Shown here: positions 15,435-60,905 of the stretch, piece after piece
Layout of the letters: the number at the start of each line of letters is the position of its first letter
How positions within the stretch are numbered: position 1 is the stretch's first letter
From: Podarcis filfolensis
Lineage: Eukaryota
Assembly (NCBI GenBank): GCA_964270895.1
Contig: OZ185447.1
Reading direction: 5' to 3' (one strand)
Length of the DNA: 64,000 nt
Notes under the pieces: model-generated
Told to the model about the DNA's origin: nothing
The model's input: the letters and a program-made list of their open reading frames with translations, nothing else
Databases searched by the model: none
Position numbers and translations under genes: made by a program

Positions 15435-16391
15435 TCAACTTGTTGGGTTCTGTACAGAGAGCAACCGTGAAACTGTCTTCTTAAATGCTCCCTTCACTTC
15501 TTTATTTCTTAGGGTATATATTATGGGGTTCAAAAATGGACTGACAACTGTGTACATAAGAGAAATTACTTGGTCGCTCCTCGGAGTGTAGCTGGACTTG
15601 GGTATTAAGTAGGTGAAGAGGGTTGTCCCAAAAAATAGTGTCACCACCATGAGGTGTGAGGAGCAAGTGGAGAAGGCTTTTCTCCTTCCCTTAGCAGAAG
15701 GAAGTTTGAGGATGGTTGAAATTATACAGATGTAGGAGAGGATGATCAGCAGGAAAGGACTCATGATGAAAATAATAGACACTGCCATGACAAGAATCTC
15801 ATTTTTGTAGGTATCTGTGCATGCCATTTTCATCACTGGTAGGAAATCACAAAAGAAGTGCTGGATGTGCTTAGAACCACAGAAGGGTAAGCTGAAGATC
15901 CATGCTGTCTGAGCAACTTGTACCAAGAAGCAAATAATCCACGCTGCGGCTGCCAACTGTGTACAGACTTGGTGATTCATGATTTCGGTGTAGTGCAATG
16001 GGTGGCCTATGGCAACATAGCGGTCATATGCCATAGCTGCCAAGAGGCAACATTCTGTCAGCCCCAGCATGGCGAAGGCATACATCTGGGCTGCACATCT
16101 TGCTAGGGATATGCTTTTATGCTCTGTTAACAGATGTACCAGCATCTGGGGCACCACACTAGTGGTGTAACACATTTCTAAGAAAGATAGGTTTACCAAA
16201 AAGAAGTACATGGGAGTCTGAAGAGAAGGGTTGAGTTTTATGAGCAGAATAATGAGCATGTTTCCCAGCAAGGTGATTATGTATGTCACCAGAAAAACGA
16301 AAAACAGCAAGATTTGCAGTTCAGCAAGATATGAAAACCCCTCCAGAATGAACTCATTCAGATTGGTCTCATTCTCACCTAGTTGTTCCAT
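15435..16391 (-). CDS. Olfactory receptor, type A copy 3, 318 aa
   Basis: Intact ORF with OR motifs; VAIGHPLHY (conserved Cys changed to Gly). Confidence 0.93.
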   Translation of the reverse strand: MEQLGENETNLNEFILEGFSYLAELQILLFFVFLVTYIITLLGNMLIILLIKLNPSLQTPMYFFLVNLSFLEMCYTTSVVPQMLVHLLTEHKSISLARCAAQMYAFAMLGLTECCLLAAMAYDRYVAIGHPLHYTEIMNHQVCTQLAAAAWIICFLVQVAQTAWIFSLPFCGSKHIQHFFCDFLPVMKMACTDTYKNEILVMAVSIIFIMSPFLLIILSYICIISTILKLPSAKGRRKAFSTCSSHLMVVTLFFGTTLFTYLIPKSSYTPRSDQVISLMYTVVSPFLNPIIYTLRNKEVKGAFKKTVSRLLSVQNPTS

Positions 16392-23700: not shown

Positions 23701-24622
23701 AAACAAGGTTCACAGCAAACTGCTTTCTCTTTCACTGTGGGCACCGGATCAGTACGGAGCATATTCAGCTTGTATAATCTTCCCTCATTTTCTCTCCCCC
23801 CCTCCATTCTATAGTTATTATTCTTTCTTTTAATTTGTTCCTTGTCCTATATTAGCATAATTTAGTTGTCTTGGTTTATTCCGCATCCCCGGCTGCCTCT
23901 TAGAGGAGGGGTTGGGGGGCACACAGGCTTAGGGCCTGTGGGGCTGGCGCCTGGCCTTGAACCCCGGGGGGCTTACGGCCCAGTTCTCAGCCAAAGCTGA
24001 AGGGGCCCCGGGCCAGGAACCTTGCACGGCTGGCAGCAGAGTGCTCCCCTCGGCAGAGGCTTAAGCGCTACCCCGTAGGGCTGAGCGTTTCCTGGGCTGC
24101 TTGCGCTGCATGGGGAGCTGCGCTTCGCGGGGTTTGCACAGGCCGCTTTGGGGCTTTTGCTGGTCGTGGCCTGGCTGCAATTTTCCCAGCGACTTTGGGT
24201 GCTGGGGACCGCCCCGCTGCCTTGTTGGCTCTGTGTGAGCCTTTCTCCTCCTTCCCACCCCCCACACTATCCCCGGCTGCTGGAGGCAGCCAGGGAGGCT
24301 GTACCAAGCGGCGGGGGACTCACCGGCGTTCCTGGGGCCTCTGGGGTCGTCCTCCGCATGGCGGTTGCCAGCGGCGGGCTCAGGCACGCTCCGGTGCATG
24401 GCGCCCATCCAGGCCTTGCCGCGTTAAGTGAGAGGCGCTCCGGGAGCGCCTTGGCACAGCCGTTCAGCGCTTCTGCACTTTCGGCAACAATATTGGCCCT
24501 GGGAGCCTCTTCTCCCTTTTTTGTTTCTCCAACAGGGCTTCAGGGCACCTGGTGGGAGCAGTTGGTGGGCCCGCCATTTTAGGTAGTCGGGCGGGAGCAC
24601 CATTTTGCTTCCTTACAGTCAG

Positions 24623-24771
24623 AGTGGCAGCCTCTAGTGGCCATCCGGCATAAGTGCAGGGTTTTTTCAACCCTGAATTTAAGTGGTGGCCTCTAGTGGC
24701 CGTTCTGATAAGTGCAGGATAACTCTAACATTGAGTGGTGGCCTCTAGTGGCTGCTTCGGGTAAGTGCAGG
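24623..24771 (+). repeat. Three imperfect direct repeats (AGTGG.GCCTCTAGTGGC...TAAGTGCAGG) in the element leader
   Basis: Copies at 24623-24660, 24682-24718 and 24734-24771; the third ends in the consensus donor CGG|GTAAGT. Confidence 0.85.
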
Positions 24772-25005
24772 GTATTTCCATCTGCACGTTTTGCCACCCA
24801 GGGGTGGCTTGTAATTTTGCAGCTTTCTATATCGGTTGCTAAATTATATTGAGTTGTTCTATTTGCTGCCATTTGATGTATGATTGCATTGTTGCTTATC
24901 TTATTTGATTTAATCAATTTAATTTAATTTAATTTAATTATTTGTTAGCCACATATTCATTTCTTATTTTAATTTTATAAATTTGTCTTTTCTACTGGCA
25001 GCAGG

Positions 25006-26470
25006 ATGGCTCCAAAGAAAAAGGTGCCAAGGATGCCTGGACCCGTGTCCTCGGCAAAGTGGCCTATAAAAGGCCCGTCCCAGGCTTTGCGTTCCCCCGA
25101 GCCTAGCCAGTCGCTGACACACCTCCAATCCATGGTCACTAGTTTAGCTGGTGACCCTGTGGCACTGGCGCGAGTTGAGGCCGAGATGGATGGCCTGATG
25201 CAATGCTGCTCAACTCCGTCAACTTCTTATGCGAGGCTGGCTCCTCCAGTGCATGCATCTTCTCCGGTGTCGCCATCTAGTGAAGATGAGAGAGGAATAT
25301 CATCAGTCGGGGGTTTCTTACCTAACACGCAACTGGCCCAGTCCCTGGTCTTACCTGTGTCCCAGGCTGCCACGCCAAGGGGTCAGGGTCGCACCAGGGG
25401 TGTGGCCAGGAGAAGGGCATCTACCCGTGGCTAGGTGGCGCGGGGTTCATCTGCGCAGTCTTCTGCAGCTGAAAGGTCGGTTCCGGGTCATTCACAGGTT
25501 GTCTCTTTTCAGTCAGTTCCAGGTGCTGTGCAGCAAGGCGATATGTCAGAGTCTTCAGTTGAGGACAGCCTTCCTCCACCTCCAAAGACCTCTTTCGCCA
25601 GGCACCGCCGCCACAAAAGGAGCTCCAGGAGGCTCGCCAAGAGGAGACGGCAGGACACCTCATCCTCCTCTACAGGAACTTCATCCCAAAGTTCCAGTAG
25701 TGATGAGGAAGCTTCTCTTAAACTTTATTGGGGCTTCGGGGAGACCTTGGGGCTCCCGAAGTGGGTTTGGGAGCGAAGGGCAAACTCTCACAGGGCGAAG
25801 TACGGGGCGGTGCAAGATTGTCGGAAAGGGGTTCTGGTGCCTAATGTAAAGGTATCTACCAATTCGGCTAGAGATCTTATACCTGGTGCCCACTTGGCTA
25901 CCAAATTGAGGTCCAGGATTTTGAATGGCCGTTATGTTGATATATTTAGCCTTGCCCCTCCGCTAGATGGTCAGGAGCTACAGGAAAAGGGCTTTGCCGC
26001 CTCTAAAAAATGGACGGTCTTAGCTAAAGTGGATAGGACATTTGAACGCTGGTTGGATAGCTTCCAGGTCTTTGCCGGAGTGGTGTCAGCAGCTTATCCT
26101 AGGAGATCTCTGCACTTATGGGTGTATTTGTCTATAGTCCGTTCGGCCTTTACAATGGCCGGGAAACTGCTGCGATATCTTATGATGAGAATTTTAGACA
26201 CAGGGCTGCCAAGATCCCTACAGCCCGCTGGGATCGGAAGGACTTGGATGTGTGGACCACTTATGTGGCTCCACGTATTGACAAAAAGGCTCCAGAACCA
26301 CAGAAACCTAAGGCTGTCCCAGCAAAGGCGGGTCGCAAGCTGTTTTGCTGAGACTTCAACAAGGGTATCTGCCAGCGTCAATCCTGCAGATACCCACATG
26401 TGTGTGAGAGGTGTTCTGGGAACCATCCGGCATCCGCTTGTGGGGGGGGCCGGCGGCCCTTTCGGAAAGG
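25006..26470 (+). pseudogene. gag-like ORF1 of element 1 (stops/frameshift), with C-terminal zinc-finger-like Cys/His motif
   Basis: Pieces 25006-25434, 25435-~26160 and 26118-26351 (SYDENFRHRAA...W); C*DFNKGICQRQSCRYPHMCERCSGNHPASAC with TGA in place of Trp. Confidence 0.8.
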
Positions 26471-28498
26471 GGGGCCTCTCAGCAGCCCTCAAAAGCCGCT
26501 CCCCAGGCCCCAGCCGCTGGAGCAGGAAAGTAGTATCCTATCCTCCTTAGCCTATACCCCGGTACGGCTACAGCCATTACTTTCATTATTACAGTCATAC
26601 CTTGACTGGGACATGGCGTCTTATTTGCGTGGTGGTTTTTCTTTAGGCTTCAGAATTCTGGTGGTCTCAATCCCGGTAGCTAGGAACCCTGCAAGCCAGA
26701 AGTCCGTTAAGGACATGCCAGAGGTGGCACGTAAGAAAATCGGGAAAGAACTGGCTTTACGTCGTATGGCCGGCCCTTTTGCCGTTTCCCCCTTTCCCAA
26801 TTTGCACATTTCACCTTTAGGTATAGTTCCTAAGAAAGCACCAGTGGAATTCCGCCTAATTCATAACCTTTCACACCCTAGGGGCACATCAGTAAATGAT
26901 GTTATTCCCCCAGAGCTTTGTTTGGTGAAGTATGCTTCTCTTGATCATGCGATCAAGATGATACAGAAATTTGGGCCAGGTGCCCTACTGGCCAAATGCG
27001 ACATTGAATCTGCATTTCAGCTGCTTCCAATTCACCCCGACGACTTTTGGTTGCTAGGTTTCCAGTTTGATGGGGGATTTTACTTTGATAAGGCCATGCC
27101 CATGGGCTGCTCGGTAGCCTGTGCCGCCTTTGAGTGTTTTAGTTCATTTCTGGATTGGGCCTTGCGCAAAAGAACTGGTTTGGGTGGAGTCACGCATTAT
27201 TTGGATGATTTTTTATTGGCCTCAGCTAGCGATACGGGGAACTGTGTTGTGTTATTGCAGGCCTTTGCTTCCTTAACGCAAGAACCGGGCGGGCCGTTGG
27301 TGGCGGAGAAGACTGAGGGTCCTTCTATGCAGCTGACTTACTTGGGTATCTTGTTGGATACTGTGGCCCAAACTTCCAGCTTGCCGGCAGATAAGATATG
27401 TTAAAAGGGGTCATTGAAGAACTGCTTCCCTTGAAGAAGGTTACCTTGTGACAGCTGCAGTCGTTGCTAGGTGACAGGATTTATGAGCTGACAAGTTAGC
27501 TAAGATAAAGCTCCGGGCACGTCGCCACCTTTGTATAAGATTTATTGCTCATCTTCAAAGCATTTTTTACAAGAGTTCAAATACATACATCCTCCTTCTA
27601 CGACTGAGATGAATCTTCTGGCTCCTCCCTCTGACGTCTCCAGCAGACCCATCTCTTGAGTCCACGCCTCCTCTTTCCTCCGCTCTGTGAGTGGCTAGGT
27701 CCTGGCATCGGCTCCCCCCTCCCAGCCTCTTCGTCTGACGTGGAAGTAAAGCTGCTGATTGCCTGCTTGGGCTCTCTATACTTGTCTCCCTCTACCTTCC
27801 GTTCTCTGATAGCCTCCCATTCCCTGACACTAGGTCACCTGAATTTTGCTTGCAGGGTGGTCACCCCGGGGCGACCATTCTGCTCTTGCTTGGCCAGACA
27901 CATGTCAGGCTTGAGGGCCCCACAGCATAGGGTGCGCCTTTCTTGTCAGGTGCGGGCTGACCTTCGTATTTGGTTGGAATTCCTGGAGGAATTCAACGGG
28001 GTGTCTCTGTGGCAGGACACTTTGAACCTCCACAATGATTTTCAGGTGCACTCCGATGCTGCAGGGTCTTTGGCGTTTGGCCTGTTTTGGGACGGTAGGT
28101 GCTGTGCTGAGCACTGGCCTCCAGCTTGGCGTGGGGAAGCTATAACTCGGGACCTAACTTTTATTGAGTTTTTTCCCATTGTAGTGGCCGTGCATTTGTG
28201 GGTCGAGCATTTCAGGGACCGTCAAGTCTGTTTTTGGTCCGATAACCAGGCGGTGGTGAACGTGCTAGCCAAGCAGTCTTCACAATCTCCTAGGGTATCA
28301 GCCCTGTTACGGGCTTTTGTTTTACATTGCTTGCATTTTAACATTGTATTTTCTGCTCGTTTTGTCCCTGGCATATCTAACGAGATTGCTGATGCTCTGT
28401 CCCGTTTTCAGATGGAGCGATTCAGGTCCCTGGCGCCAGTGGCTCGAGACCGTCTGGAATTTTTCCCGGATCATCTCTGGAACCTTGGCAGCACTTAG
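26400..28498 (+). pseudogene. Reverse transcriptase / RNase H of element 1, interrupted
   Basis: PKKAPVEFRLIHNLS, LAKCDIESAF, MPMGC, HYLDDF, LGILLDT; RNase H SDAAG, FIEFFPI, WSDNQAVV, ADALSR. Frameshift near 27400, a stop, and a solo-LTR insertion. Confidence 0.93.
27472..27829 (-). mobile_element. Solo LTR (358 bp) nested in the Ngaro RT-RH linker
   Basis: TG...CA termini (TGACAGGA / TCCCTGACA), perfect 5-bp TSD CTAGG (27467-27471, 27830-27834), AATAAA on the minus strand; removing it restores QSLLGHLNFAC. Confidence 0.88.
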
Positions 28499-29385
28499 TT
28501 TTACAGGGAGAAGCTGCATCTATTGCCCCCTCCACTCTGAGGTCTTATAAAAAGGCCTGGACTGACTTTTTACACTTTACCAGGCAGTCGGTTGTAGGGG
28601 AAGTTAGTACCCCCCATTCTACTGCTCAGGTGCTCCAGTATTTGGCGCATCTATTTCAGATGCGTCGGGCGGCCAGGAAGCTGAGAATTCATACAGCGGC
28701 GATTTCTTTCTTTAGCAGGGCGTTTTTTAACAAGGATCCATGTGGGAAGTTTGTTGTGCGGAAGGCACTTGAGGGCTGGGGGCGACTTTGTCCTTCCAGG
28801 CCAACTTCCAGGTGGCCCATCACATTTGATTTGCTGACAAAGATGCGCAGTAAATTGAGGAGCATCTGTTGGTCTAGGTTTGAGGCTTGGCTATTTTCCG
28901 CAGCCTTTTCATTAGCCTTTTTGGGGGCCCTGAGAGTGGGGGAGGTGGTCCTTGAGCCTAAGCGGGATGGAGGTTCAAGTGGTTTGTTGTTGCAGGACGT
29001 GAGTCTGTCTCCGTTAGAATTGCAAGTCAATGTCAGGAATTCAAAAACTGATCAACTAGGTAGGGGAGCGGTTATTTGGCTCCCGGCAACTGGGGAGGGG
29101 GGCCCTTGCCCGGTTAAGGATCTCAAGAAATATTTGGCCTTGCAACCTACAGGTGAGGGCCCTTTGTTTATTCATGAGAACGGGCATCCATTGGCGCATC
29201 ATCAGTTCACCAAGGTATTGCGCAAAGTTATTGCAGCATGTGGCCATGTGGCTTCTGAATTTGCTCCTCATTCCTTCCAGATTGGGGCTGCAACAACAGC
29301 TTCCCATTGGGGTTTATCGGTGGAAAGGATTAAAGACCTGGGCCAGTGGAAGTCGGACGTGTTTAGAGGTTATGTGCGGATATGA
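28412..29385 (+). pseudogene. Tyrosine recombinase of element 1 (frame open, catalytic HxxR changed to HSFQ)
   Basis: APSTLRSYKKAW, GALRVGE, SKTDQ, CPV, HSFQIGAAT, GQWKS, RGYVR. Confidence 0.92.
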
Positions 29386-29425
29386 CATTGATTTCGTGTA
29401 CTTACGTTTCTTGTTTTAACCCTAG

Positions 29426-30000
29426 GTCTAGCCACTATTCGCATCTGGATAGTGGGGCACAGTACTGTGCATTGGGCTGCTGACAGAGCTCGTCAGTCCG
29501 GATTGGGAGATGGCCTTGGCCTTCCGCAGCACGTACAGGTGTCCTGGATCTCCAGAATGGGGATGCTGTGGAAGGAATTCTTACCACTTATGCAGAGGCG
29601 TATTCTCCTGGATGGCCTTCCTACGGCGATCGTGGTGCAGCTCAGGGAAAATGATATGGTTTCCTCTTCTTGTTATGTTTTGTGTGCTGCTATCTTACAA
29701 GATTTGAGGGAATTGGCGGCCATGGTGCCGGCAACTAAAATAATTTGGTCACAGTTGCTGCAACGCCGCATCTGGCGGGGTAGTCCTTGCCCAGCTGCCA
29801 CCAAGCAAGTTAGGAAGCAAATTAATTCTGCAGTGAGCAAGTTGGTGGTTGGTTTGGGTGGGTTTGTGATTCCTCACCCTTTTATTACTTTCAAAGCCGC
29901 TGAATTCTATAGGATGGATGGGGTTCATCTTTCCTCATCTGGGAATGACGTTTGGTTGAATTCAGTGGTGGCTAAGTTGAGGGTGTGGTTGAGTTTGTGA
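29426..30000 (+). CDS. SGNH/GDSL hydrolase-like ORF of element 1 (no ATG start; begins at a splice acceptor)
   Basis: Block I IWIVGHS, block II GM, block III QLREND, block V DGVHL. Confidence 0.82.
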
Positions 30001-30029
30001 GTGGTTGGCGGCGAGCGTAAGGGCTCGAG

Positions 30030-30470
30030 TGGCGGTTAGGCATTGGTTTAAATTGGTTGGTGGAGGGGGTATGGATTGGCTGTGCCTGCCCCTCCAATGC
30101 TGCTGCTGCACGGGAATTCCGTTAAAGGAATCCAGGGGCTTACCATCCTTTCGTCCAAACCCCTGGAATCAGGTTTGGGCCGCGTAAGCCCCTGGGAGCA
30201 TGCGGGGAGAAGCTGAGGGTCTGTGCCACAGCTCCAGTTATCCCTGATCTTGTTCCTCCACACTGGCTTTCGCTGGAATCTGGGAGTCAGTGCTGTCCCC
30301 TAGGCGGGGGCGGGGGCAGATAGTCATAACCAATGCCTAAGCAACCACTCACAATTTGTATGTTTAATAAAGTTGTAGCCAAAATTATGCCAAAAACCTT
30401 AAACAAAAATTTATGAGTGATGTGTGAGTTATTGGGGTAGGGGTGTTTTGGGGGACCTCAGTACGCAAAA
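30030..30470 (+). repeat. B repeat of element 1, with 13-bp inverted repeat and poly(A) signal
   Basis: TTAGGCATTGGTT 30036-30048 / AACCAATGCCTAA 30328-30340; AATAAAGTTGTAGCC near 30366. Confidence 0.85.
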
Positions 30471-49350: not shown

Positions 49351-50118
49351 TTTGCGCACCCCCAGGAATAATAAAAACATATTGACACAGAATTTTAGTT
49401 TAAAGGTTAATGGGCATAATTTAGGCCACAACTTTATTGATTACAGAAATGTTAGTGGTACTGGCTTAGGCATTAGCAATAACTATATCTGACTCCTGCC
49501 CGCCTTGCAGGAAATCTAGAAGGGTAAACCACCAAAAGAGGGAGCTCCATCGATGGCGACTAACTGAAACTCACCCCAGGGTTCTTGCTGGGTCCTGGCA
49601 TGGCCCTAGCCCCCAATCAGACTTTGGACGAAACCCAACCCACAGATTCCTTTACTGGAATACCCTTGTACCTGGAGGGGCAGGTGATGGCTGCACCTCC
49701 CCTCCCCCACATCTCACTAAGCCAATGCCTAACCACCAAACCTTACAAAGTTGTAACGATTGCTAAGAGGTAGGCGAAAACCAAATGGCCAGTGCCAATC
49801 TGCCAAATGGAAAAAAGTCCTACCCGGCCCCTGTTCCAAAACAGAAGATCAACCAAAGTCCAGAGCAAGACCAAAGCAGACATCTAAAACATTGGGGGGG
49901 TGGGCAGGTGTTCGGCGGCGTGAAGCCAGGTAAAGCCCCAGCAATGCACCACCACCTTTTAAAGGCCCCCACTCTCCGATTGGCCAATAAGCCATGGCAT
50001 GATCGTGGGGCCACCGCGTGGCTCAGGCTCATCCCCCACCCCCTCCATGAATGGAGGGAGCACCTTGGGCCCATGCACAATGCAGCCCCTCAATTAGGAG
50101 GATCCGATTTCCTGTTTT
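49351..50118 (-). mobile_element. Solo A-B unit of a Ngaro-type element
   Basis: B with TTAGGCATT(A/G)GC inverted repeat, AATAAAGTTGTGGCC and GCAAA end; A with TTTTCGCCTACCTC motif; no ORFs. The A start is approximate. Confidence 0.8.
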
Positions 50119-52116: not shown

Positions 52117-52904
52117 AAAGCCACTCCTGACCTAAGGAGGGGGGGGGTTGCAGGATCACGCCCCCGTCCATGCTCTTGCAGGGCTGGCGTCAGCCCCACG
52201 GGACTCCGGGATTCCCCAGCCTCTTGAATATTCATCGCCCCCAGCGCCAGCCAATCGGCTGGCGGCAGGGGTGGGGTTTCTAGGTGCACTTAAGGTCAGG
52301 GTAGCCTTGGCTCGCCCCTTTCTTTCTCTTCAGCAGCAGCGGTTTCCCACCCACCCGCCCTTTAGGTTCGCTTGCGGACTTTGCTATGGGCTTCGGCTGG
52401 TCACCGCAAGGGGCCTGGTAGGAGTTTTTCCATTTGCCTAATTGGCTGTATTTTAGAAGCCACTTGGTTTTTTCGCCTACCTCGTAGCAAAACGTCACAA
52501 CTCCCTGGTTTTGGCAGTTAGGCATTGGCAGGGGTATTGTTATGCAAATGAAGTCGGGGGGGAGGAATGCCATCACCTCCCCCAAATCCTGAAGGGTAGT
52601 TCGTTAAAGGACTCCGGGGGGCGTCGCCTCGTCCGGAACCTACGGAGGCTAGGGCCTAAAGCACGCTCCCGAGCGGTAACCCCTTGGGGAGCGCCTAGGG
52701 ATGTGCATCTCGGGGGCTCCCCCTGTTGGTGCTTAACCCTTCCCAGTTAGACCGGATAGTCTGTTAGGGCCAATGCCTAAAAGCCAATACCACTCTTACC
52801 TGTAATCAATAAAGTTGTGGCCATTTTCGCCCATTAACTTAAAATTCCGTGTCCGTTGTCTTTATTTACTCCATCAGTGGGAGGGGGCGGGTATTGCCAT
52901 GCAA
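52117..52904 (+). mobile_element. Solo A-B unit of a Ngaro-type element (788 bp)
   Basis: Starts AAAGCCACT like A2 of element 2; collinear with the 789-bp A2+B2; ends GCCATGCAA. Confidence 0.88.
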
Positions 52905-54639: not shown

Positions 54640-55483
54640 AAAACGGGGGGCGCCCTTTCTATGGACGCATGCAGCCCTTGGATCTGGAGTGGCTCCATCA
54701 GCATAGGCTTGGCTTCGTCTTCCCTCAGGTGGGATACCTGGAGGTCTCCGCCTATCTCAGTCAGTTGTCCAATCCCGCCTGGGGGAAGCGTTGCCAAGGA
54801 GACCAGGTCAGGTAGGGGAGGGACTACCTGTCCACACAATAGAGGGAGGATCTTACTTGGGAATCCTCACTTGGCTCCAGAGCTTCTCCCACCCTACCCA
54901 CCCTCAGTTAATGTCTTATTTTGCAGGTTAACTTTTCTTCACAGGTTTTGCAGGTTAACTTTTCTTCACAGGTATGCAGGCGCTGCTACGTTAAGGTCGC
55001 TGTTAAAGGGCCGGAAAGGAATTCCCCTGCATTGGCAGGTTTGCCTTTCCCGTATCAAAACGTCACAACTTTGGCGGTATCAGGCCTTGGGCGGAATCCT
55101 TTTGTCCATCTTCCTCTTTGCAGCGGCGATACCAGGGTTCCCCGTTAAAGGGGTTTCTGAAGGGAGGCTTTGACCGTACGCCAAAAGGTCGTCATTGCTC
55201 TCCCCTGCAGCGGCGGCATAACAGGGGCGGCTATCTCTGCTTGAACATATGTTCTCCAGAGCCAGCCCACCCCCCCCCCACATTGGATAACCCTGATGCT
55301 CCCTAGGTCCCCAGCTGGGGACTGGGGAGGGAGAACGCCCAATGCCTGAGCCAAGGTCTACCCACATTTGAAATTTAATAAGGTTGTGGCCAATTTAATC
55401 CCATAACACGTTGTCTTTAGTCGTTATTCCACATGACTGGGGGGGTGCTCGCGATCTGGGGGACTCCGCCTGTCCACGCAAAA
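54640..55483 (+). mobile_element. Solo A-B unit of a more divergent Ngaro-type subfamily
   Basis: AAAACGTCACAACT junction motif, TCAGGC.TTGGGCG / CGCCCAATGCCTGA inverted repeat, CGTTAAAGG, AATAAGGTTGTGGCC, end CCACGCAAAA. Left boundary uncertain. Confidence 0.72.
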
Positions 55484-59088: not shown

Positions 59089-59494
59089 TTTGCGTGGCGA
59101 GTTCCCGCCCCCCACCAGGATAAATAAAGACACAAGACACCATAATTTAAGGTTAATTGGGCGAATTAGGCCACAACTTTATTGAATTTCAGGAATGAGA
59201 GGCATTGGCTTAGGCATTGGTCCTAACGACTATCCGGCTCCAGCCCATTTGCTGGAGACACGGGGAAGGGTTAACCTTATATCGGGGGAGTCTCCTGCCA
59301 AGGCACGTCGACTAGGAGCTCCCCCGGGTCACCGCTCTGGGGCGTGCCTTTGGCCCTCACCTCCATAGGCTTCGGACAGGGCCACGCCCCCCGGAGTCCT
59401 TTAACGGACCACCCTTCGGTCGCTGGGGGGAGGTGATGGCGTTCCTCCCCCCCCACACATCCTCTTAACCCCTTCTTACCAATGCCTACCGCCA
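59089..59494 (-). repeat. B2 split direct repeat (406 bp)
   Basis: Direct copy of 59878-60283 at offset 789; no difference seen by eye. Confidence 0.95.
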
Positions 59495-59877
59495 ATGCCG
59501 AGAAGTTGTGACGAGTTGCTACGAGGTAGGCGAAAAACCAAAAGGCCAGAAATCGCCAATTGGGAAAAATTCCTACCATGCCCCTTGCGGCGACAGACCG
59601 AAGTCCATAGCAAAGTCAAATACCTACCTAAGCCTAGTTAAAGGGAGGGAGGGTGGGAAAACGTGGGGGCGAGCCGGCGAAAAGAGGGTGAGCCCCCTCC
59701 GTGCCGGCCCTAAATAGGGCAGGCCATGCCCCCCCCAGCCAGCCAGCTGATTGGCTGGCTGGGGGGGGCAGACCCGACCAGGATTCCCCTGCTCTCGCGG
59801 GGGCTGCGACCAGCCCCCGCTCATGTGGGGTGGGCGTGAAGCCCGCAACCCCACCTCCTGGGCAGGCCGGAAGTGGC
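59495..59877 (-). repeat. A2 repeat (383 bp) with CCAAT and TATTTA
   Basis: Lies between B1 and B2; homologous to the A half of the solo units. Confidence 0.85.
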
Positions 59878-60283
59878 TTTGCGTGGCGAGTTCCCGCCCC
59901 CCACCAGGATAAATAAAGACACAAGACACCATAATTTAAGGTTAATTGGGCGAATTAGGCCACAACTTTATTGAATTTCAGGAATGAGAGGCATTGGCTT
60001 AGGCATTGGTCCTAACGACTATCCGGCTCCAGCCCATTTGCTGGAGACACGGGGAAGGGTTAACCTTATATCGGGGGAGTCTCCTGCCAAGGCACGTCGA
60101 CTAGGAGCTCCCCCGGGTCACCGCTCTGGGGCGTGCCTTTGGCCCTCACCTCCATAGGCTTCGGACAGGGCCACGCCCCCCGGAGTCCTTTAACGGACCA
60201 CCCTTCGGTCGCTGGGGGGAGGTGATGGCGTTCCTCCCCCCCCACACATCCTCTTAACCCCTTCTTACCAATGCCTACCGCCA
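59878..60283 (-). repeat. B1 split direct repeat (406 bp)
   Basis: Directly after the SGNH stop; copy of 59089-59494. Confidence 0.95.
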
Positions 60284-60311
60284 CACGAGCAATCGCTCGC
60301 CGCCAATACTC

Positions 60312-60905
60312 TCATGCCTGAAACCAATCCCCTACCCCCTTTGCTATATCAGTCAGCCGCATGTCATTTCCCGCATCTGAACGATGCACGCCATCAAGCC
60401 AAATATCATTTCCCGCATCCGAAAGATGCACGCCATCAAGCCGGTAGAGGGCCTCACAGTTGCCCGGGTGGTCAATGACCCACCCACCCAGGGCTGCCAC
60501 TCTACGCACCACCGCCTGATCCAAGGCTTTCCTAGCCCTATTTGTGGCTATCGGGCACCTGCTCTCTCTCCAAACCCGGCTTTCCATCAACAAGGCCCCA
60601 AGAATGGTGATGTTTGGATAAGAGGCCTTAAGTTCCTCAAAGTCACTAAAGATATGCCACATCAAGTCGACTACCTTTCTGTAAGCTAAATCCTTTTCGC
60701 CAAAGTGGATAACTAAAGCATCTGGGGGGCCCTCCGCTGCCGCTCTAGCCCTAATCGCGGGCAACATTTCGGCCCAGCGCATTCCCCTCCGATAGCTCCA
60801 AGATATATTGATGTAGTTAAGGTGCGGCCCGAGACCGGAATTGATGGCGCGGGCCCTGGCCCAATGCACAATGCTGTGCCCGATTATCCAGATGTGCGCC
60901 CTCAT
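60312..60905 (-). CDS. SGNH/GDSL hydrolase-like ORF of element 2, 197 aa
   Basis: IWIIGHS, RGMRW, HFGEKD, DGVHL (block V duplicated). Confidence 0.82.
   Translation of the reverse strand: MRAHIWIIGHSIVHWARARAINSGLGPHLNYINISWSYRRGMRWAEMLPAIRARAAAEGPPDALVIHFGEKDLAYRKVVDLMWHIFSDFEELKASYPNITILGALLMESRVWRESRCPIATNRARKALDQAVVRRVAALGGWVIDHPGNCEALYRLDGVHLSDAGNDIWLDGVHRSDAGNDMRLTDIAKGVGDWFQA

What the first reader, a model, noticed from the sequence alone, without database searches (positions are those of the whole stretch)
59211..59488. Covarying ~260-nt multi-helix structure in the B repeat of all five Ngaro copies
Seen: each B repeat is closed by a stem whose sequence changes together on both arms. 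Element 1 TTAGGCATTGGTT/AACCAATGCCTAA (30036/30328); 52k TTAGGCATTGGC/GCCAATGCCTAA (52518/52769); element 2 TAGGCATTGGT/ACCAATGCCTA (59211/59478); 49k 11 of 12 pairs (49466/49721); 55k TCAGGC.TTGGGCG/CGCCCAATGCCTGA (55080/55336). The enclosed length stays at about 240-280 nt. A second long-range helix also covaries: GAAGGGT/ACCCTTC (element 2 and 52k), AAGGGTA/TACCCTT (49k), CAGGGTT/AACCCTG (55k); it is only partial in element 1. Local hairpins keep their position but not their sequence (e.g. CTCCAGC/GCTGGAG vs TCCTGC/GCAGGA). Short motifs CGTTAAAGG and GATAGT are conserved, and the whole domain sits just 5' of the AATAAA. Inference: a functional RNA or ssDNA structure, such as a self-priming or template-jump element (these elements lack a tRNA primer site), an export element for unspliced RNA, or a ribozyme. 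I know of no description of it.
Basis: partly seen in the sequence, partly recalled or inferred. Interest (0 to 1): 0.85.

Follow-up and report, generated by a model that had tools for sequence, protein, structure and literature searches.

The report
Conserved folded RNA domain in Ngaro retrotransposons
The B terminal repeat of these Ngaro jumping genes carries a roughly 250-base folded domain, kept from frogs to lizards although its sequence has changed, that sits beside the poly(A) signal and gives a first handle on how this poorly understood class of elements processes or copies its RNA.

Summary
All five B copies in the window have the closing stem at the stated coordinates, enclosing 240-280 nt.

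The same stem at the same position occurs in 11 further Ngaro elements fetched from other species. These come from Podarcis, Lacerta, Zootoca, a gecko, Anolis, a snake and Xenopus. Their arm sequences are partly or wholly different.

- **Inner helices:** they covary. On the P4+P5 subdomain 88% of cells pair against 75% when shuffled (0 of 500 shuffles as high).
- **Strand:** G·U wobbles are concentrated on the sense strand, so the fold most likely acts in the RNA.
- **Context-specific outer helices, found here:**
  - Upstream of B1, the last ~40 nt of the hydrolase ORF, including its stop codon, pair with the ~40 nt before AAUAAA.
  - Upstream of B2, the end of a unique spacer I call X (GUCACAACUU) pairs with AAGUUGUGGC directly after AAUAAA.
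- **Databases and literature:** no Rfam family matches, and no description was found in the searchable literature.

It is a new structured cis-element of a retrotransposon. My favoured function is control of poly(A)-site choice between the two identical B copies. This is inferred, not shown. A protein-recognition or priming platform is the main rival.

The parts
59089..59494 (-). B2 repeat of element 2 (406 nt). The folded domain is at about 59211-59488, and AATAAA (sense) at 59178-59183.
   Evidence: Identical to 59878-60283. Sequence.
59478..59488 (-). Closing helix P1, 5' arm in the transcript (TAGGCATTGGT), element 2 B2
59211..59221 (-). Closing helix P1, 3' arm (ACCAATGCCTA), element 2 B2
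59503..59512 (-). End of spacer X (GTCACAACTT): 5' arm of the outer helix P(-1)
   Evidence: 10 pairs; RNAalifold; P=0.002
59170..59179 (-). AAGTTGTGGC, overlapping the last bases of AATAAA: 3' arm of P(-1)
59878..60283 (-). B1 repeat of element 2, an identical copy of the domain
60302..60328 (-). Last codons and TGA stop of the SGNH-hydrolase ORF: 5' strand of the B1-specific outer helix P0ext. It pairs with 59985-60012, just before AATAAA.
30036..30340 (+). Element 1 B domain. P1 arms at 30036-30048 and 30328-30340. P0ext at 29990-30007 with 30342-30358. AATAAA at 30366-30371.
52518..52780 (+). 52k solo A-X-B unit: P1-closed domain. X end at 52494-52502 pairs with 52813-52821. AATAAA at 52808-52813.
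49466..49732 (-). 49k solo unit: P1-closed domain, one G·U in P1 and two U·G in P(-1)
55080..55349 (+). 55k copy: P1-closed domain (TCAGGCCTTGGGCG / CGCCCAATGCCTGA)
59335..59420 (-). Inner subdomain P4 (hairpin with GUUAAA loop) plus P5 (long hairpin)
   Evidence: Covariance model R2 97 bits. Pair counts.

Best explanation
**What it is.** The B repeat encodes a cis-acting folded domain of the element's own sense transcript.
- A branched core of about 190-290 nt is closed by an 11-20 bp helix, P1. In lacertids the core holds hairpins P2 and P7 and a P3-enclosed set P4-P6.
- Around P1 lie further long-range helices. Their 3' strands belong to B. Their 5' strands come from whatever lies upstream of that B copy.

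**The two contexts.**
- *B1:* the end of the hydrolase ORF, stop codon included, pairs with the ~40 nt before AAUAAA and with its first bases (P0ext).
- *B2:* the end of the unique spacer X pairs with the last bases of AAUAAA and the next 8 nt (P(-1)).

**Proposed function.** The poly(A) signal therefore sits at the foot of a long helical stalk, and the two otherwise identical B copies fold differently. I propose that this difference governs 3'-end formation. The signal in B1 would be read through so that the full-length RNA keeps B1-A2-X-B2. The signal in B2 would be used. The conserved loops of the core would serve as a binding platform for element or host proteins.

**Shown and inferred.**
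- Shown: the helices, their covariation, their conservation from Xenopus to lizards, and the sense-strand wobble bias.
- Inferred: that the RNA is the active form, and the poly(A) function.
For: **P1 across lineages.** P1 is present in 16 of 16 independent copies, with lineage-specific arms:
- GGCATTGG/CCAATGCC in most lacertids.
- GGCACTGG/CCAGTGCC in L008, a double change relative to its close relative L007.
- GGCATTGAGTG/CACTCAATGCC in L003.
- GCATGGGCCCTGGATC/GATCCAGGACCCATGC in Anolis.
- GGGGCGGAAA/TTTCCGCCCC in the snake.
- CCTTGTCAGTCTGCC/GGCAGACTGGCAAGG in Xenopus.

Cognate arms give longer perfect helices than non-cognate arms for the diverged lineages: 14 against at most 8 for L008, and 10 against at most 8 for the snake.

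**Covariation.**
- RNAalifold finds 14 of 43 pairs (B1 context) and 14 of 38 pairs (B2 context) with compensatory changes.
- A covariance model built from 8 copies finds the copies that were left out: element 1, L007, L008, the 55k copy and the gecko.
- On that alignment 88.3% of cells pair against 75.2% when shuffled (0 of 500). The covariation score is 0.319 against 0.138. With partners slid it is at most 0.111.

**P(-1).**
- 9-13 bp in all 11 B2-context copies outside the snake, each with P at most 0.01.
- Compensatory changes: CUU/AAG to CUC/GAG in Anolis, and AAC/GUU to AGC/GCU in Xenopus.

**P0ext.** The duplex is stronger than shuffles in 9 of 13 copies, z from -2.8 to -4.3. Its 5' strand contains the ORF stop codon.

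**Strand.**
- Single mismatches inside long-range helices: 11 G·U against 1 A·C.
- G·U among long-range pairs: 108 of 905 on the sense strand, 44 of 824 on the antisense strand.
- A U·G pair is kept in 13 of 15 copies that have letters at that pair (17 distinct rows, 2 with gaps) inside P5.

**Accessibility.** The 40 nt before AAUAAA are predicted less accessible in B1 (0.12-0.24) than in B2 (0.33-0.47) in 7 squamate elements.
Against: - There are no transcript data. The start site, the cleavage site and the use of B1 versus B2 are unknown.
- P(-1) would also mask part of the B2 signal, which does not fit a simple 'block B1, free B2' scheme.
- Folding the whole 3' region gives two near-equivalent topologies. 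One is local. In the other, nested one, the X end pairs with the B1 flank and the ORF end pairs with B2.
- P0ext was not significant in element 1, L007 and L008 with my windows. It is absent in Xenopus, where AAUAAA lies about 110 nt further downstream.
- The sense strand is G- and T-rich, which alone raises the G·U count.
- Whole-domain folding z-scores are similar on both strands.
- The alignment used was fitted to the model.
- All copies come from one tetrapod Ngaro lineage with the hydrolase ORF. Fish, invertebrate and fungal Ngaro elements were not examined.
Confidence: 0.45

Rival explanations
1. The domain is a recognition, packaging or priming platform. The element's Gag-like protein or reverse transcriptase would bind the folded 3' domain to select the RNA and to start first-strand synthesis near the 3' end. 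The 3' UTR structures bound by the R2 and stringent LINE reverse transcriptases work this way.
For: - The domain lies at the 3' end of the presumed genomic RNA.
- Single-stranded motifs are conserved on covarying stems, such as the GUUAAA loop of P4 and GAUAGU.
- No primer is known for tyrosine-recombinase retrotransposons, and a 3' hairpin has been proposed as the primer for DIRS-1 (PMC7192593).
- No tRNA-type site was found.
Against: - It does not explain why the outer helices differ between B1 and B2, or why they overlap AAUAAA.
- The loop motifs are not recognisable in Anolis, the snake or Xenopus.
- The U·G wobble kept in P(-1) argues against one arm being copied from the other during priming.
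Confidence: 0.25
2. The domain is a nuclear export element for unspliced or partly spliced element RNA, analogous to the retroviral CTE, RRE or RexRE.
For: - The size, the long closing stem, the branched core and the position in the 3' untranslated terminal repeat resemble the RRE and RexRE.
- Another first-stage note (s1-279426) suggests that the hydrolase ORF is expressed from a spliced RNA. That would create a need to export unspliced RNA.
Against: - Splicing was not verified here.
- No Rex- or Rev-like ORF is evident.
- There is no match to any Rfam export element.
- The poly(A)-proximal, context-specific helices are not explained.
Confidence: 0.12
3. The fold acts in single-stranded cDNA. 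It could be a snap-back primer for second-strand synthesis. It could also be a folded substrate for the tyrosine recombinase, as with integron attC sites or the CTX phage attP hairpin.
For: - DIRS-1 intermediates are linear single-stranded cDNA (PMC7192593).
- Perfect inverted repeats fold on either strand.
- The arms carry repeated 9-nt motifs (GGCATTGGC) that look like protein-binding sites.
Against: - First-strand cDNA is antisense, and there the conserved wobbles become C·A mismatches.
- The element ends (the B|A junction) lie about 130 nt from the stem.
- The repeated motif is lost in the snake, Xenopus and Anolis while the pairing stays.
Confidence: 0.08
4. The arms are double-stranded DNA protein sites that only happen to be inverted. 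They could be CCAAT boxes for NF-Y in a promoter, with AATAAA as a TATA-like box about 45-60 bp downstream, or recombinase sites.
For: In most lacertid copies both arms contain CCAAT/ATTGG. A second CCAAT follows the 3' arm at promoter-like spacing from AATAAA.
Against: - CCAAT is destroyed in both arms together while pairing is kept: L008 has CCAGT, L003 has TCAAT, and the snake and Xenopus have unrelated sequences.
- Nested helices involve coding sequence.
- G·U wobbles and inner-helix covariation have no meaning in duplex DNA.
Confidence: 0.04
5. The domain is a self-cleaving ribozyme. Alternatively the stem is a chance palindrome or a nested miniature inverted-repeat transposon (MITE).
For: None beyond the existence of a compact fold with terminal inverted repeats.
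Against: - No ribozyme family matched even at E up to 10.
- The TTA...TAA next to the arms is part of the palindrome, not a direct target duplication.
- The stem sits at the same place in lineages whose arm sequences are unrelated.
- The shuffle tests exclude chance.
Confidence: 0.03

Closest known systems
HTLV-1 / BLV Rex-responsive element (about 255 nt, in the 3' LTR)
   Same: - A branched RNA domain of about 250 nt closed by a long stem.
- It lies inside a terminal repeat next to the poly(A) signal.
- The fold itself affects 3'-end formation by setting the geometry around AAUAAA.

This comparison is from general knowledge and was not tested here.
   Different: - RexRE lies between AAUAAA and the cleavage site. 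The Ngaro domain lies upstream of AAUAAA.
- No Rex-like protein is evident.
- There is no sequence or covariance-model similarity.
- The Ngaro outer helices use different 5' partners at the two repeat copies.
HIV-1 poly(A) hairpin in R
   Same: The poly(A) hexamer is partly base-paired. The element must ignore one copy of an identical signal and use the other.
   Different: - The HIV hairpin is a local stem-loop of about 45 nt, identical at both ends. Site choice there relies on U3 enhancers and the splice donor.
- Here the occluding strands are long-range and differ between the two copies.
3' UTR structures of non-LTR retrotransposons (R2, stringent-type LINEs)
   Same: A conserved fold at the 3' end of the element RNA, with covariation and little sequence conservation, that could be read by the element's reverse transcriptase.
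   Different: - Those elements prime on nicked target DNA and have no terminal repeats.
- Protein binding is not shown for Ngaro.
DIRS-1 internal complementary region and proposed 3' hairpin primer
   Same: Same order of elements (tyrosine-recombinase retrotransposons). Internal complementarities are thought to serve replication (PMC7192593).
   Different: - The ICR is complementary to the element's termini and acts at the cDNA level.
- The proposed DIRS-1 hairpin is about 14 nt.
- The Ngaro domain is a branched fold of about 250 nt inside B, with sense-strand wobbles.

Membership tests
Any Rfam 15 family (including RRE, ribozymes, HBV epsilon, miRNA precursors) | Score at or above the family's gathering threshold against its covariance model | tested here: not met
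   - Zero hits at gathering threshold in the window and in six related loci.
- With E up to 10 on the B regions, only generic hairpin or miRNA-like hits far below threshold.
Ngaro retrotransposon (host element) | Reverse transcriptase and tyrosine recombinase ORFs with split direct repeats A1-ORFs-B1-A2-B2 | tested here: met
   - RVT_1 hit, and a weak Phage_integrase hit below Pfam's cut-off.
- B1/B2 and A1/A2 repeats mapped in seven related elements.
- Relatives are annotated as XerD-like integrases in lizards.
- One difference from the textbook scheme: a unique spacer X of 77-189 nt lies between A2 and B2.
Structured cis-acting RNA element (generic) | Base pairs kept through compensatory substitutions, above shuffled and shifted controls | tested here: met
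   Lineage-specific arms.
Self-cleaving ribozyme | Match to a known catalytic core, or demonstrated cleavage | tested here: not met
   No ribozyme family matched at E up to 10. Cleavage cannot be tested with these tools.
tRNA primer-binding site or tRNA-like structure | A tRNA gene-like fold, or 12-18 nt complementary to a tRNA 3' end next to a repeat | tested here: inconclusive
   - ARAGORN finds nothing in the window.
- B begins with a conserved TGGCGG, but the following bases differ among lineages, so no single tRNA would fit.
- No host tRNA set was available for comparison.
Nested MITE / terminal-inverted-repeat DNA transposon | Terminal inverted repeats flanked by a direct target-site duplication, with copies outside the host element | tested here: not met
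   - The flanking TTA...TAA is inverted, not direct.
- nhmmer finds the unit only inside Ngaro B repeats.
NF-Y CCAAT-box promoter module | An intact CCAAT pentamer, required at the site | tested here: not met
   The pentamer is lost in L008, L003, the snake, Xenopus and Anolis, while the complementarity is kept.
Folded single-strand recombination site (integron attC, CTX attP type) | A hairpin recognised and cut by the tyrosine recombinase on one DNA strand | not testable with these tools
   Indirect only: the wobble bias favours the sense strand, whereas first-strand cDNA is antisense.

The most novel reading that the evidence does not exclude
The B domain and its two alternative outer helices form a switch that tells two identical terminal-repeat copies apart by their upstream neighbours.
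- The ORF end and the X end each exist once. Their targets around AAUAAA exist twice.
- The signal in B2 would stay open.

This would be a new solution to the terminal-repeat polyadenylation problem. It would also be the first defined cis-acting RNA signal in the replication cycle of tyrosine-recombinase retrotransposons.
Probability: 0.3. Interest if true: 0.75.

Novelty: new member of a known kind. Interest (0 to 1): 0.62.

Why it matters
How tyrosine-recombinase retrotransposons (DIRS, Ngaro, PAT, VIPER) make and process their genomic RNA, prime reverse transcription and rebuild their repeats is largely unknown. The accepted models rest on repeat geometry alone.

A folded domain with clear covariation, conserved from amphibian to squamate elements and physically tied to the poly(A) signal, gives concrete targets for mutation. 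These are P1, P0ext, P(-1) and the loop motifs.

It also shows that the repeat scheme of these tetrapod elements is A1-I-B1-A2-X-B2, with a conserved unique spacer. The replication models need to take that spacer into account.

For annotation, the domain is a usable signature for finding Ngaro B repeats and solo units whose sequence has drifted.

Tried and rejected
- **Pattern scans.** CCAATGCCTAAGC...AATAAAGTTGT gave no hits in the metagenome or viral collections. More copies had to come from protein look-ups.
- **Sequence profile.** The nhmmer profile of lacertid B copies does not reach Anolis, the snake or Xenopus. Their B repeats were located by self-comparison instead.
- **Duplex energies with wide windows.** They are dominated by non-specific G/C pairing and do not separate cognate from non-cognate arms. 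I replaced them with longest-helix and narrow-window tests.
- **First covariance model.** The model built from the automatic consensus had only 10 poorly placed pairs. I replaced it with a model using a hand-derived structure.
- **Whole-domain folding z-scores.** They do not tell the strands apart.
- **A typed 450-column structure for the pair counter.** Avoided because of the check on long typed text.
- **Original Ngaro paper.** Goodwin and Poulter 2004 is not held, so I cannot exclude that it mentions these inverted repeats.
- **Considered and rejected:** tRNA primer site, MITE, CCAAT promoter module and ribozyme. Reasons are in the membership table.

Full report
**Setting.**
- The window is a vertebrate gene cluster with about 15 ORFs of 306-325 aa that look like a receptor-gene array. 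It carries GC-rich insertions.
- Element 1 (about 24000-30400, plus strand) has an RVT_1 domain and a weak integrase-family hit. Its last ORF, and the matching ORF of element 2, belong to the SGNH/GDSL hydrolase type found in relatives.
- Element 2 lies on the minus strand from 59089 to beyond the window end. Its 406-nt B repeat occurs twice, at 59089-59494 and 59878-60283.
- The 52k and 55k copies are on the plus strand and the 49k copy on the minus strand.
- The closest recombinase relatives are annotated in Podarcis, Lacerta, Zootoca and a gecko. The genome is therefore probably a squamate. This is an inference.

**Check of the observation.**
Each appears in the minimum-energy fold of its copy on either strand.
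- The second long-range helix, the position-conserved hairpins, the CGTTAAAGG and GATAGT motifs and the AATAAA downstream are all present.
- Five copies are too few for statistics, so I collected more.

**More copies.**
- Protein searches with the hydrolase, recombinase and reverse-transcriptase ORFs, followed by contig look-ups, gave Ngaro loci from seven further species. These are Podarcis muralis (five loci), Lacerta agilis, Zootoca vivipara, the gecko Eublepharis, Anolis sagrei, the snake Erythrolamprus and Xenopus tropicalis.
- A sequence profile found the B repeats in the lacertids and the gecko. In Anolis, the snake and Xenopus, B has diverged beyond profile detection, and I located it as the direct repeat downstream of the ORFs.

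**The closing helix is universal and its sequence is not.**
- All 16 independent copies have a helix that closes 190-290 nt, starting a few bases after a conserved TGGCRG at the start of B.
- Most lacertids share TTAGGCATTGG/CCAATGCCTAA.
- L008 has GGCACTGG/CCAGTGCC, two matching substitutions relative to its close relative L007.
- L003 has GGCATTGAGTG/CACTCAATGCC.
- Anolis has GCATGGGCCCTGGATC/GATCCAGGACCCATGC.
- The snake has GGGGCGGAAA/TTTCCGCCCC.
- Xenopus has CCTTGTCAGTCTGCC/GGCAGACTGGCAAGG, with one U·G.
- The longest perfect run between the start of B and the stretch 150-345 nt downstream exceeds shuffles at P of at most 0.01 in 14 of 16 copies. The 55k copy and the gecko fail this test only because their helices are interrupted.
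- For the diverged lineages the cognate 3' arm is the best partner in the cross-comparison.

**The interior.**
- RNAalifold on MAFFT alignments recovers P1, the P4 hairpin with its GUUAAA loop, and the base of the P5 hairpin. It finds 14 of 43 pairs (B1 context) and 14 of 38 pairs (B2 context) with compensatory changes.
- I built a covariance model of P4+P5 from eight similar copies, using a structure read from the folds. It finds, full length, all the copies that were left out: element 1 at 38 bits, L007 and L008 at 31-34 bits, the 55k copy at 24 bits and the gecko at 21 bits. It does not find Anolis, the snake or Xenopus.
- On the resulting alignment:
  - 88.3% of cells pair against 75.2% when shuffled (0 of 500);
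  - 13 pairs have changes on both sides (3 of 500);
  - the covariation score is 0.319 against 0.138;
  - with partners slid by 1-3 columns, pairing falls to 28-58% and the score to at most 0.111.
- The alignment is fitted to the model, which favours the structure. The slide control and the independent RNAalifold result point the same way.

**New outer helices.** Folding each B with its natural upstream flank shows further long-range helices.
- *Upstream of B1.* The last ~40 nt of the hydrolase ORF pair with the ~40 nt between the P1 3' arm and AAUAAA, and with the first bases of the hexamer.
  - Example from L001: ATTGGTTACAGGT/ACCTGTAATCAAT plus GAGGGTATTGGC/GCCAATACCGCTC.
  - The stop codon lies inside this 5' strand.
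  - Third-codon positions change together with the non-coding strand: TTA, TTG and TTT in the ORF against TAA, CAA and AAA in B.
  - The gecko, Anolis and the element 1 group have their own versions.
  - The duplex is stronger than shuffles in 9 of 13 copies. It is not significant in the element 1 group with my windows, and it is absent in Xenopus.
  - A small hairpin with a variable sequence sits between this strand and P1 in every species. In Xenopus and the snake that hairpin holds the stop codon.
- *Upstream of B2.* The sequence just before B2, GUCACAACUU, pairs with AAGUUGUGGC, which overlaps the end of AAUAAA.
  - The helix is 9-13 bp in all 11 B2-context copies outside the snake, each with P of at most 0.01.
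  - Anolis (CUC/GAG) and Xenopus (AGC/GCU) carry compensatory changes.
  - The snake has a different helix in the equivalent place.

**Architecture.** Self-comparison shows that the repeat shared with the 5' end (A, 184-271 nt) covers only the first part of the interval between B1 and B2. A unique spacer, which I call X (77-189 nt), follows it.
- The elements are therefore A1-I-B1-A2-X-B2. The solo units in the window are A-X-B.
- X begins with a conserved C-rich run (CCCACCCNCCCTCCC) and ends with the P(-1) arm.

**Which strand folds.**
- Single mismatches flanked by Watson-Crick pairs in long-range helices: 11 G·U against 1 A·C.
- G·U pairs make up 108 of 905 long-range pairs in sense folds and 44 of 824 in antisense folds.
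- The U·G in P(-1) is the same in every species except the snake. A U·G inside P5 is kept in 13 of the 15 copies that have letters at that pair.
- The sense strand is G/T-rich, which accounts for part of this bias, and whole-domain z-scores are similar on both strands.
- I read the evidence as favouring sense RNA without excluding a role in DNA.

**Function.** The data show a fold that puts the poly(A) signal at the foot of a helical stalk and that differs between B1 and B2 only in the outer layer.
- The element must read through the signal in B1 to keep A2-X-B2 in its RNA, and must stop at B2. Control of poly(A)-site choice is therefore my preferred reading.
- In its favour: the 40 nt before AAUAAA are predicted to be much less accessible in B1 than in B2 in seven squamate elements.
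- Against it: P(-1) would also cover part of the B2 hexamer, and the complete 3' region has two near-equivalent folds.
  - In the nested fold the X end clamps the B1 flank and the ORF end reaches B2.
  - A kinetic version would fit the data. This is speculation.
- Main rivals: a binding platform for the element's proteins or for priming, and an export element.
- Priming in which one P(-1) arm templates the other is unlikely, because the wobble would then be erased.
- Ribozyme, tRNA site, MITE and CCAAT-box readings were tested and not supported.

**Novelty.**
- No Rfam family matches.
- Full-text searches on Ngaro and DIRS, and four papers read for hairpins, secondary structure or inverted repeats, gave no description.
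- The nearest statement in the literature is a 14-nt hairpin at the DIRS-1 RNA 3' end, proposed as a primer.
- The original Ngaro paper could not be read.
- I class the finding as a new structured cis-element in a retroelement terminal repeat: a known kind of thing, a new family. It has an unusual two-context design.

Noticed in passing
window 59495-59877 (minus strand); L003 12178-12351; L017 13967-14140: The interval between B1 and B2 is not all 'A2'. Only its first 184-271 nt repeat the 5' A1. A unique spacer X of 77-189 nt follows. It is present from Xenopus to lizards, so the scheme is A1-I-B1-A2-X-B2.
   Followed up: partly
window 59643-57 (plus strand, GGGAGGGAGGGTGGG); window 52347-52361 (CCCACCCACCCGCCC); X start in L003-L005, L007, L008, L016, L017: X begins with a conserved C-rich run. 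Its complement is four G3 tracts with 1-nt loops, a strong G-quadruplex motif on the first-strand cDNA side. Its position just after A2 recalls a primer or strand-transfer site.
   Followed up: no
window 59727-59770: A near-perfect palindromic hairpin in A contains a consensus CCAAT box (AGCCAATCAG on the element's sense strand). It gives weak miRNA-like and HBV-epsilon-like Rfam hits far below threshold. It is a candidate promoter element.
   Followed up: no
L009 1-5927 (Logan contig ERR14657340): This assembled contig starts exactly at AATAAAGTTGTGGCC and ends inside the small hairpin just before B1. It therefore reads B-tail, A, ORFs and lacks only the folded domain. Possible causes are an assembly break at the GC-rich fold, a repeat-collapsed path, or a B-A-I junction from a circular or tandem form.
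   Followed up: partly
window 30380-30450: Element 1 ends after a single B, with no A2-X-B2. This fits recombination between B1 and B2, or truncation.
   Followed up: no
L003, L004, L007, L008, L005, L016, L017 element ends: B ends in ...ACGCAA(A) and A begins with AA(A). The two ends share 2-3 A residues at the B|A junction. No target-site duplication is seen, as expected for tyrosine-recombinase integration.
   Followed up: partly
window 1092-57965: About 15 intact ORFs of 306-325 aa on both strands form a tandem gene cluster. From size and spacing it is probably a chemosensory receptor family. This was not checked.
   Followed up: no
L015 13766-19000 and 5000-6900: In the Anolis sagrei locus the Ngaro element is flanked by long tandem arrays with a period of about 90 nt. 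The B repeat tail recurs at 15622-15832.
   Followed up: no
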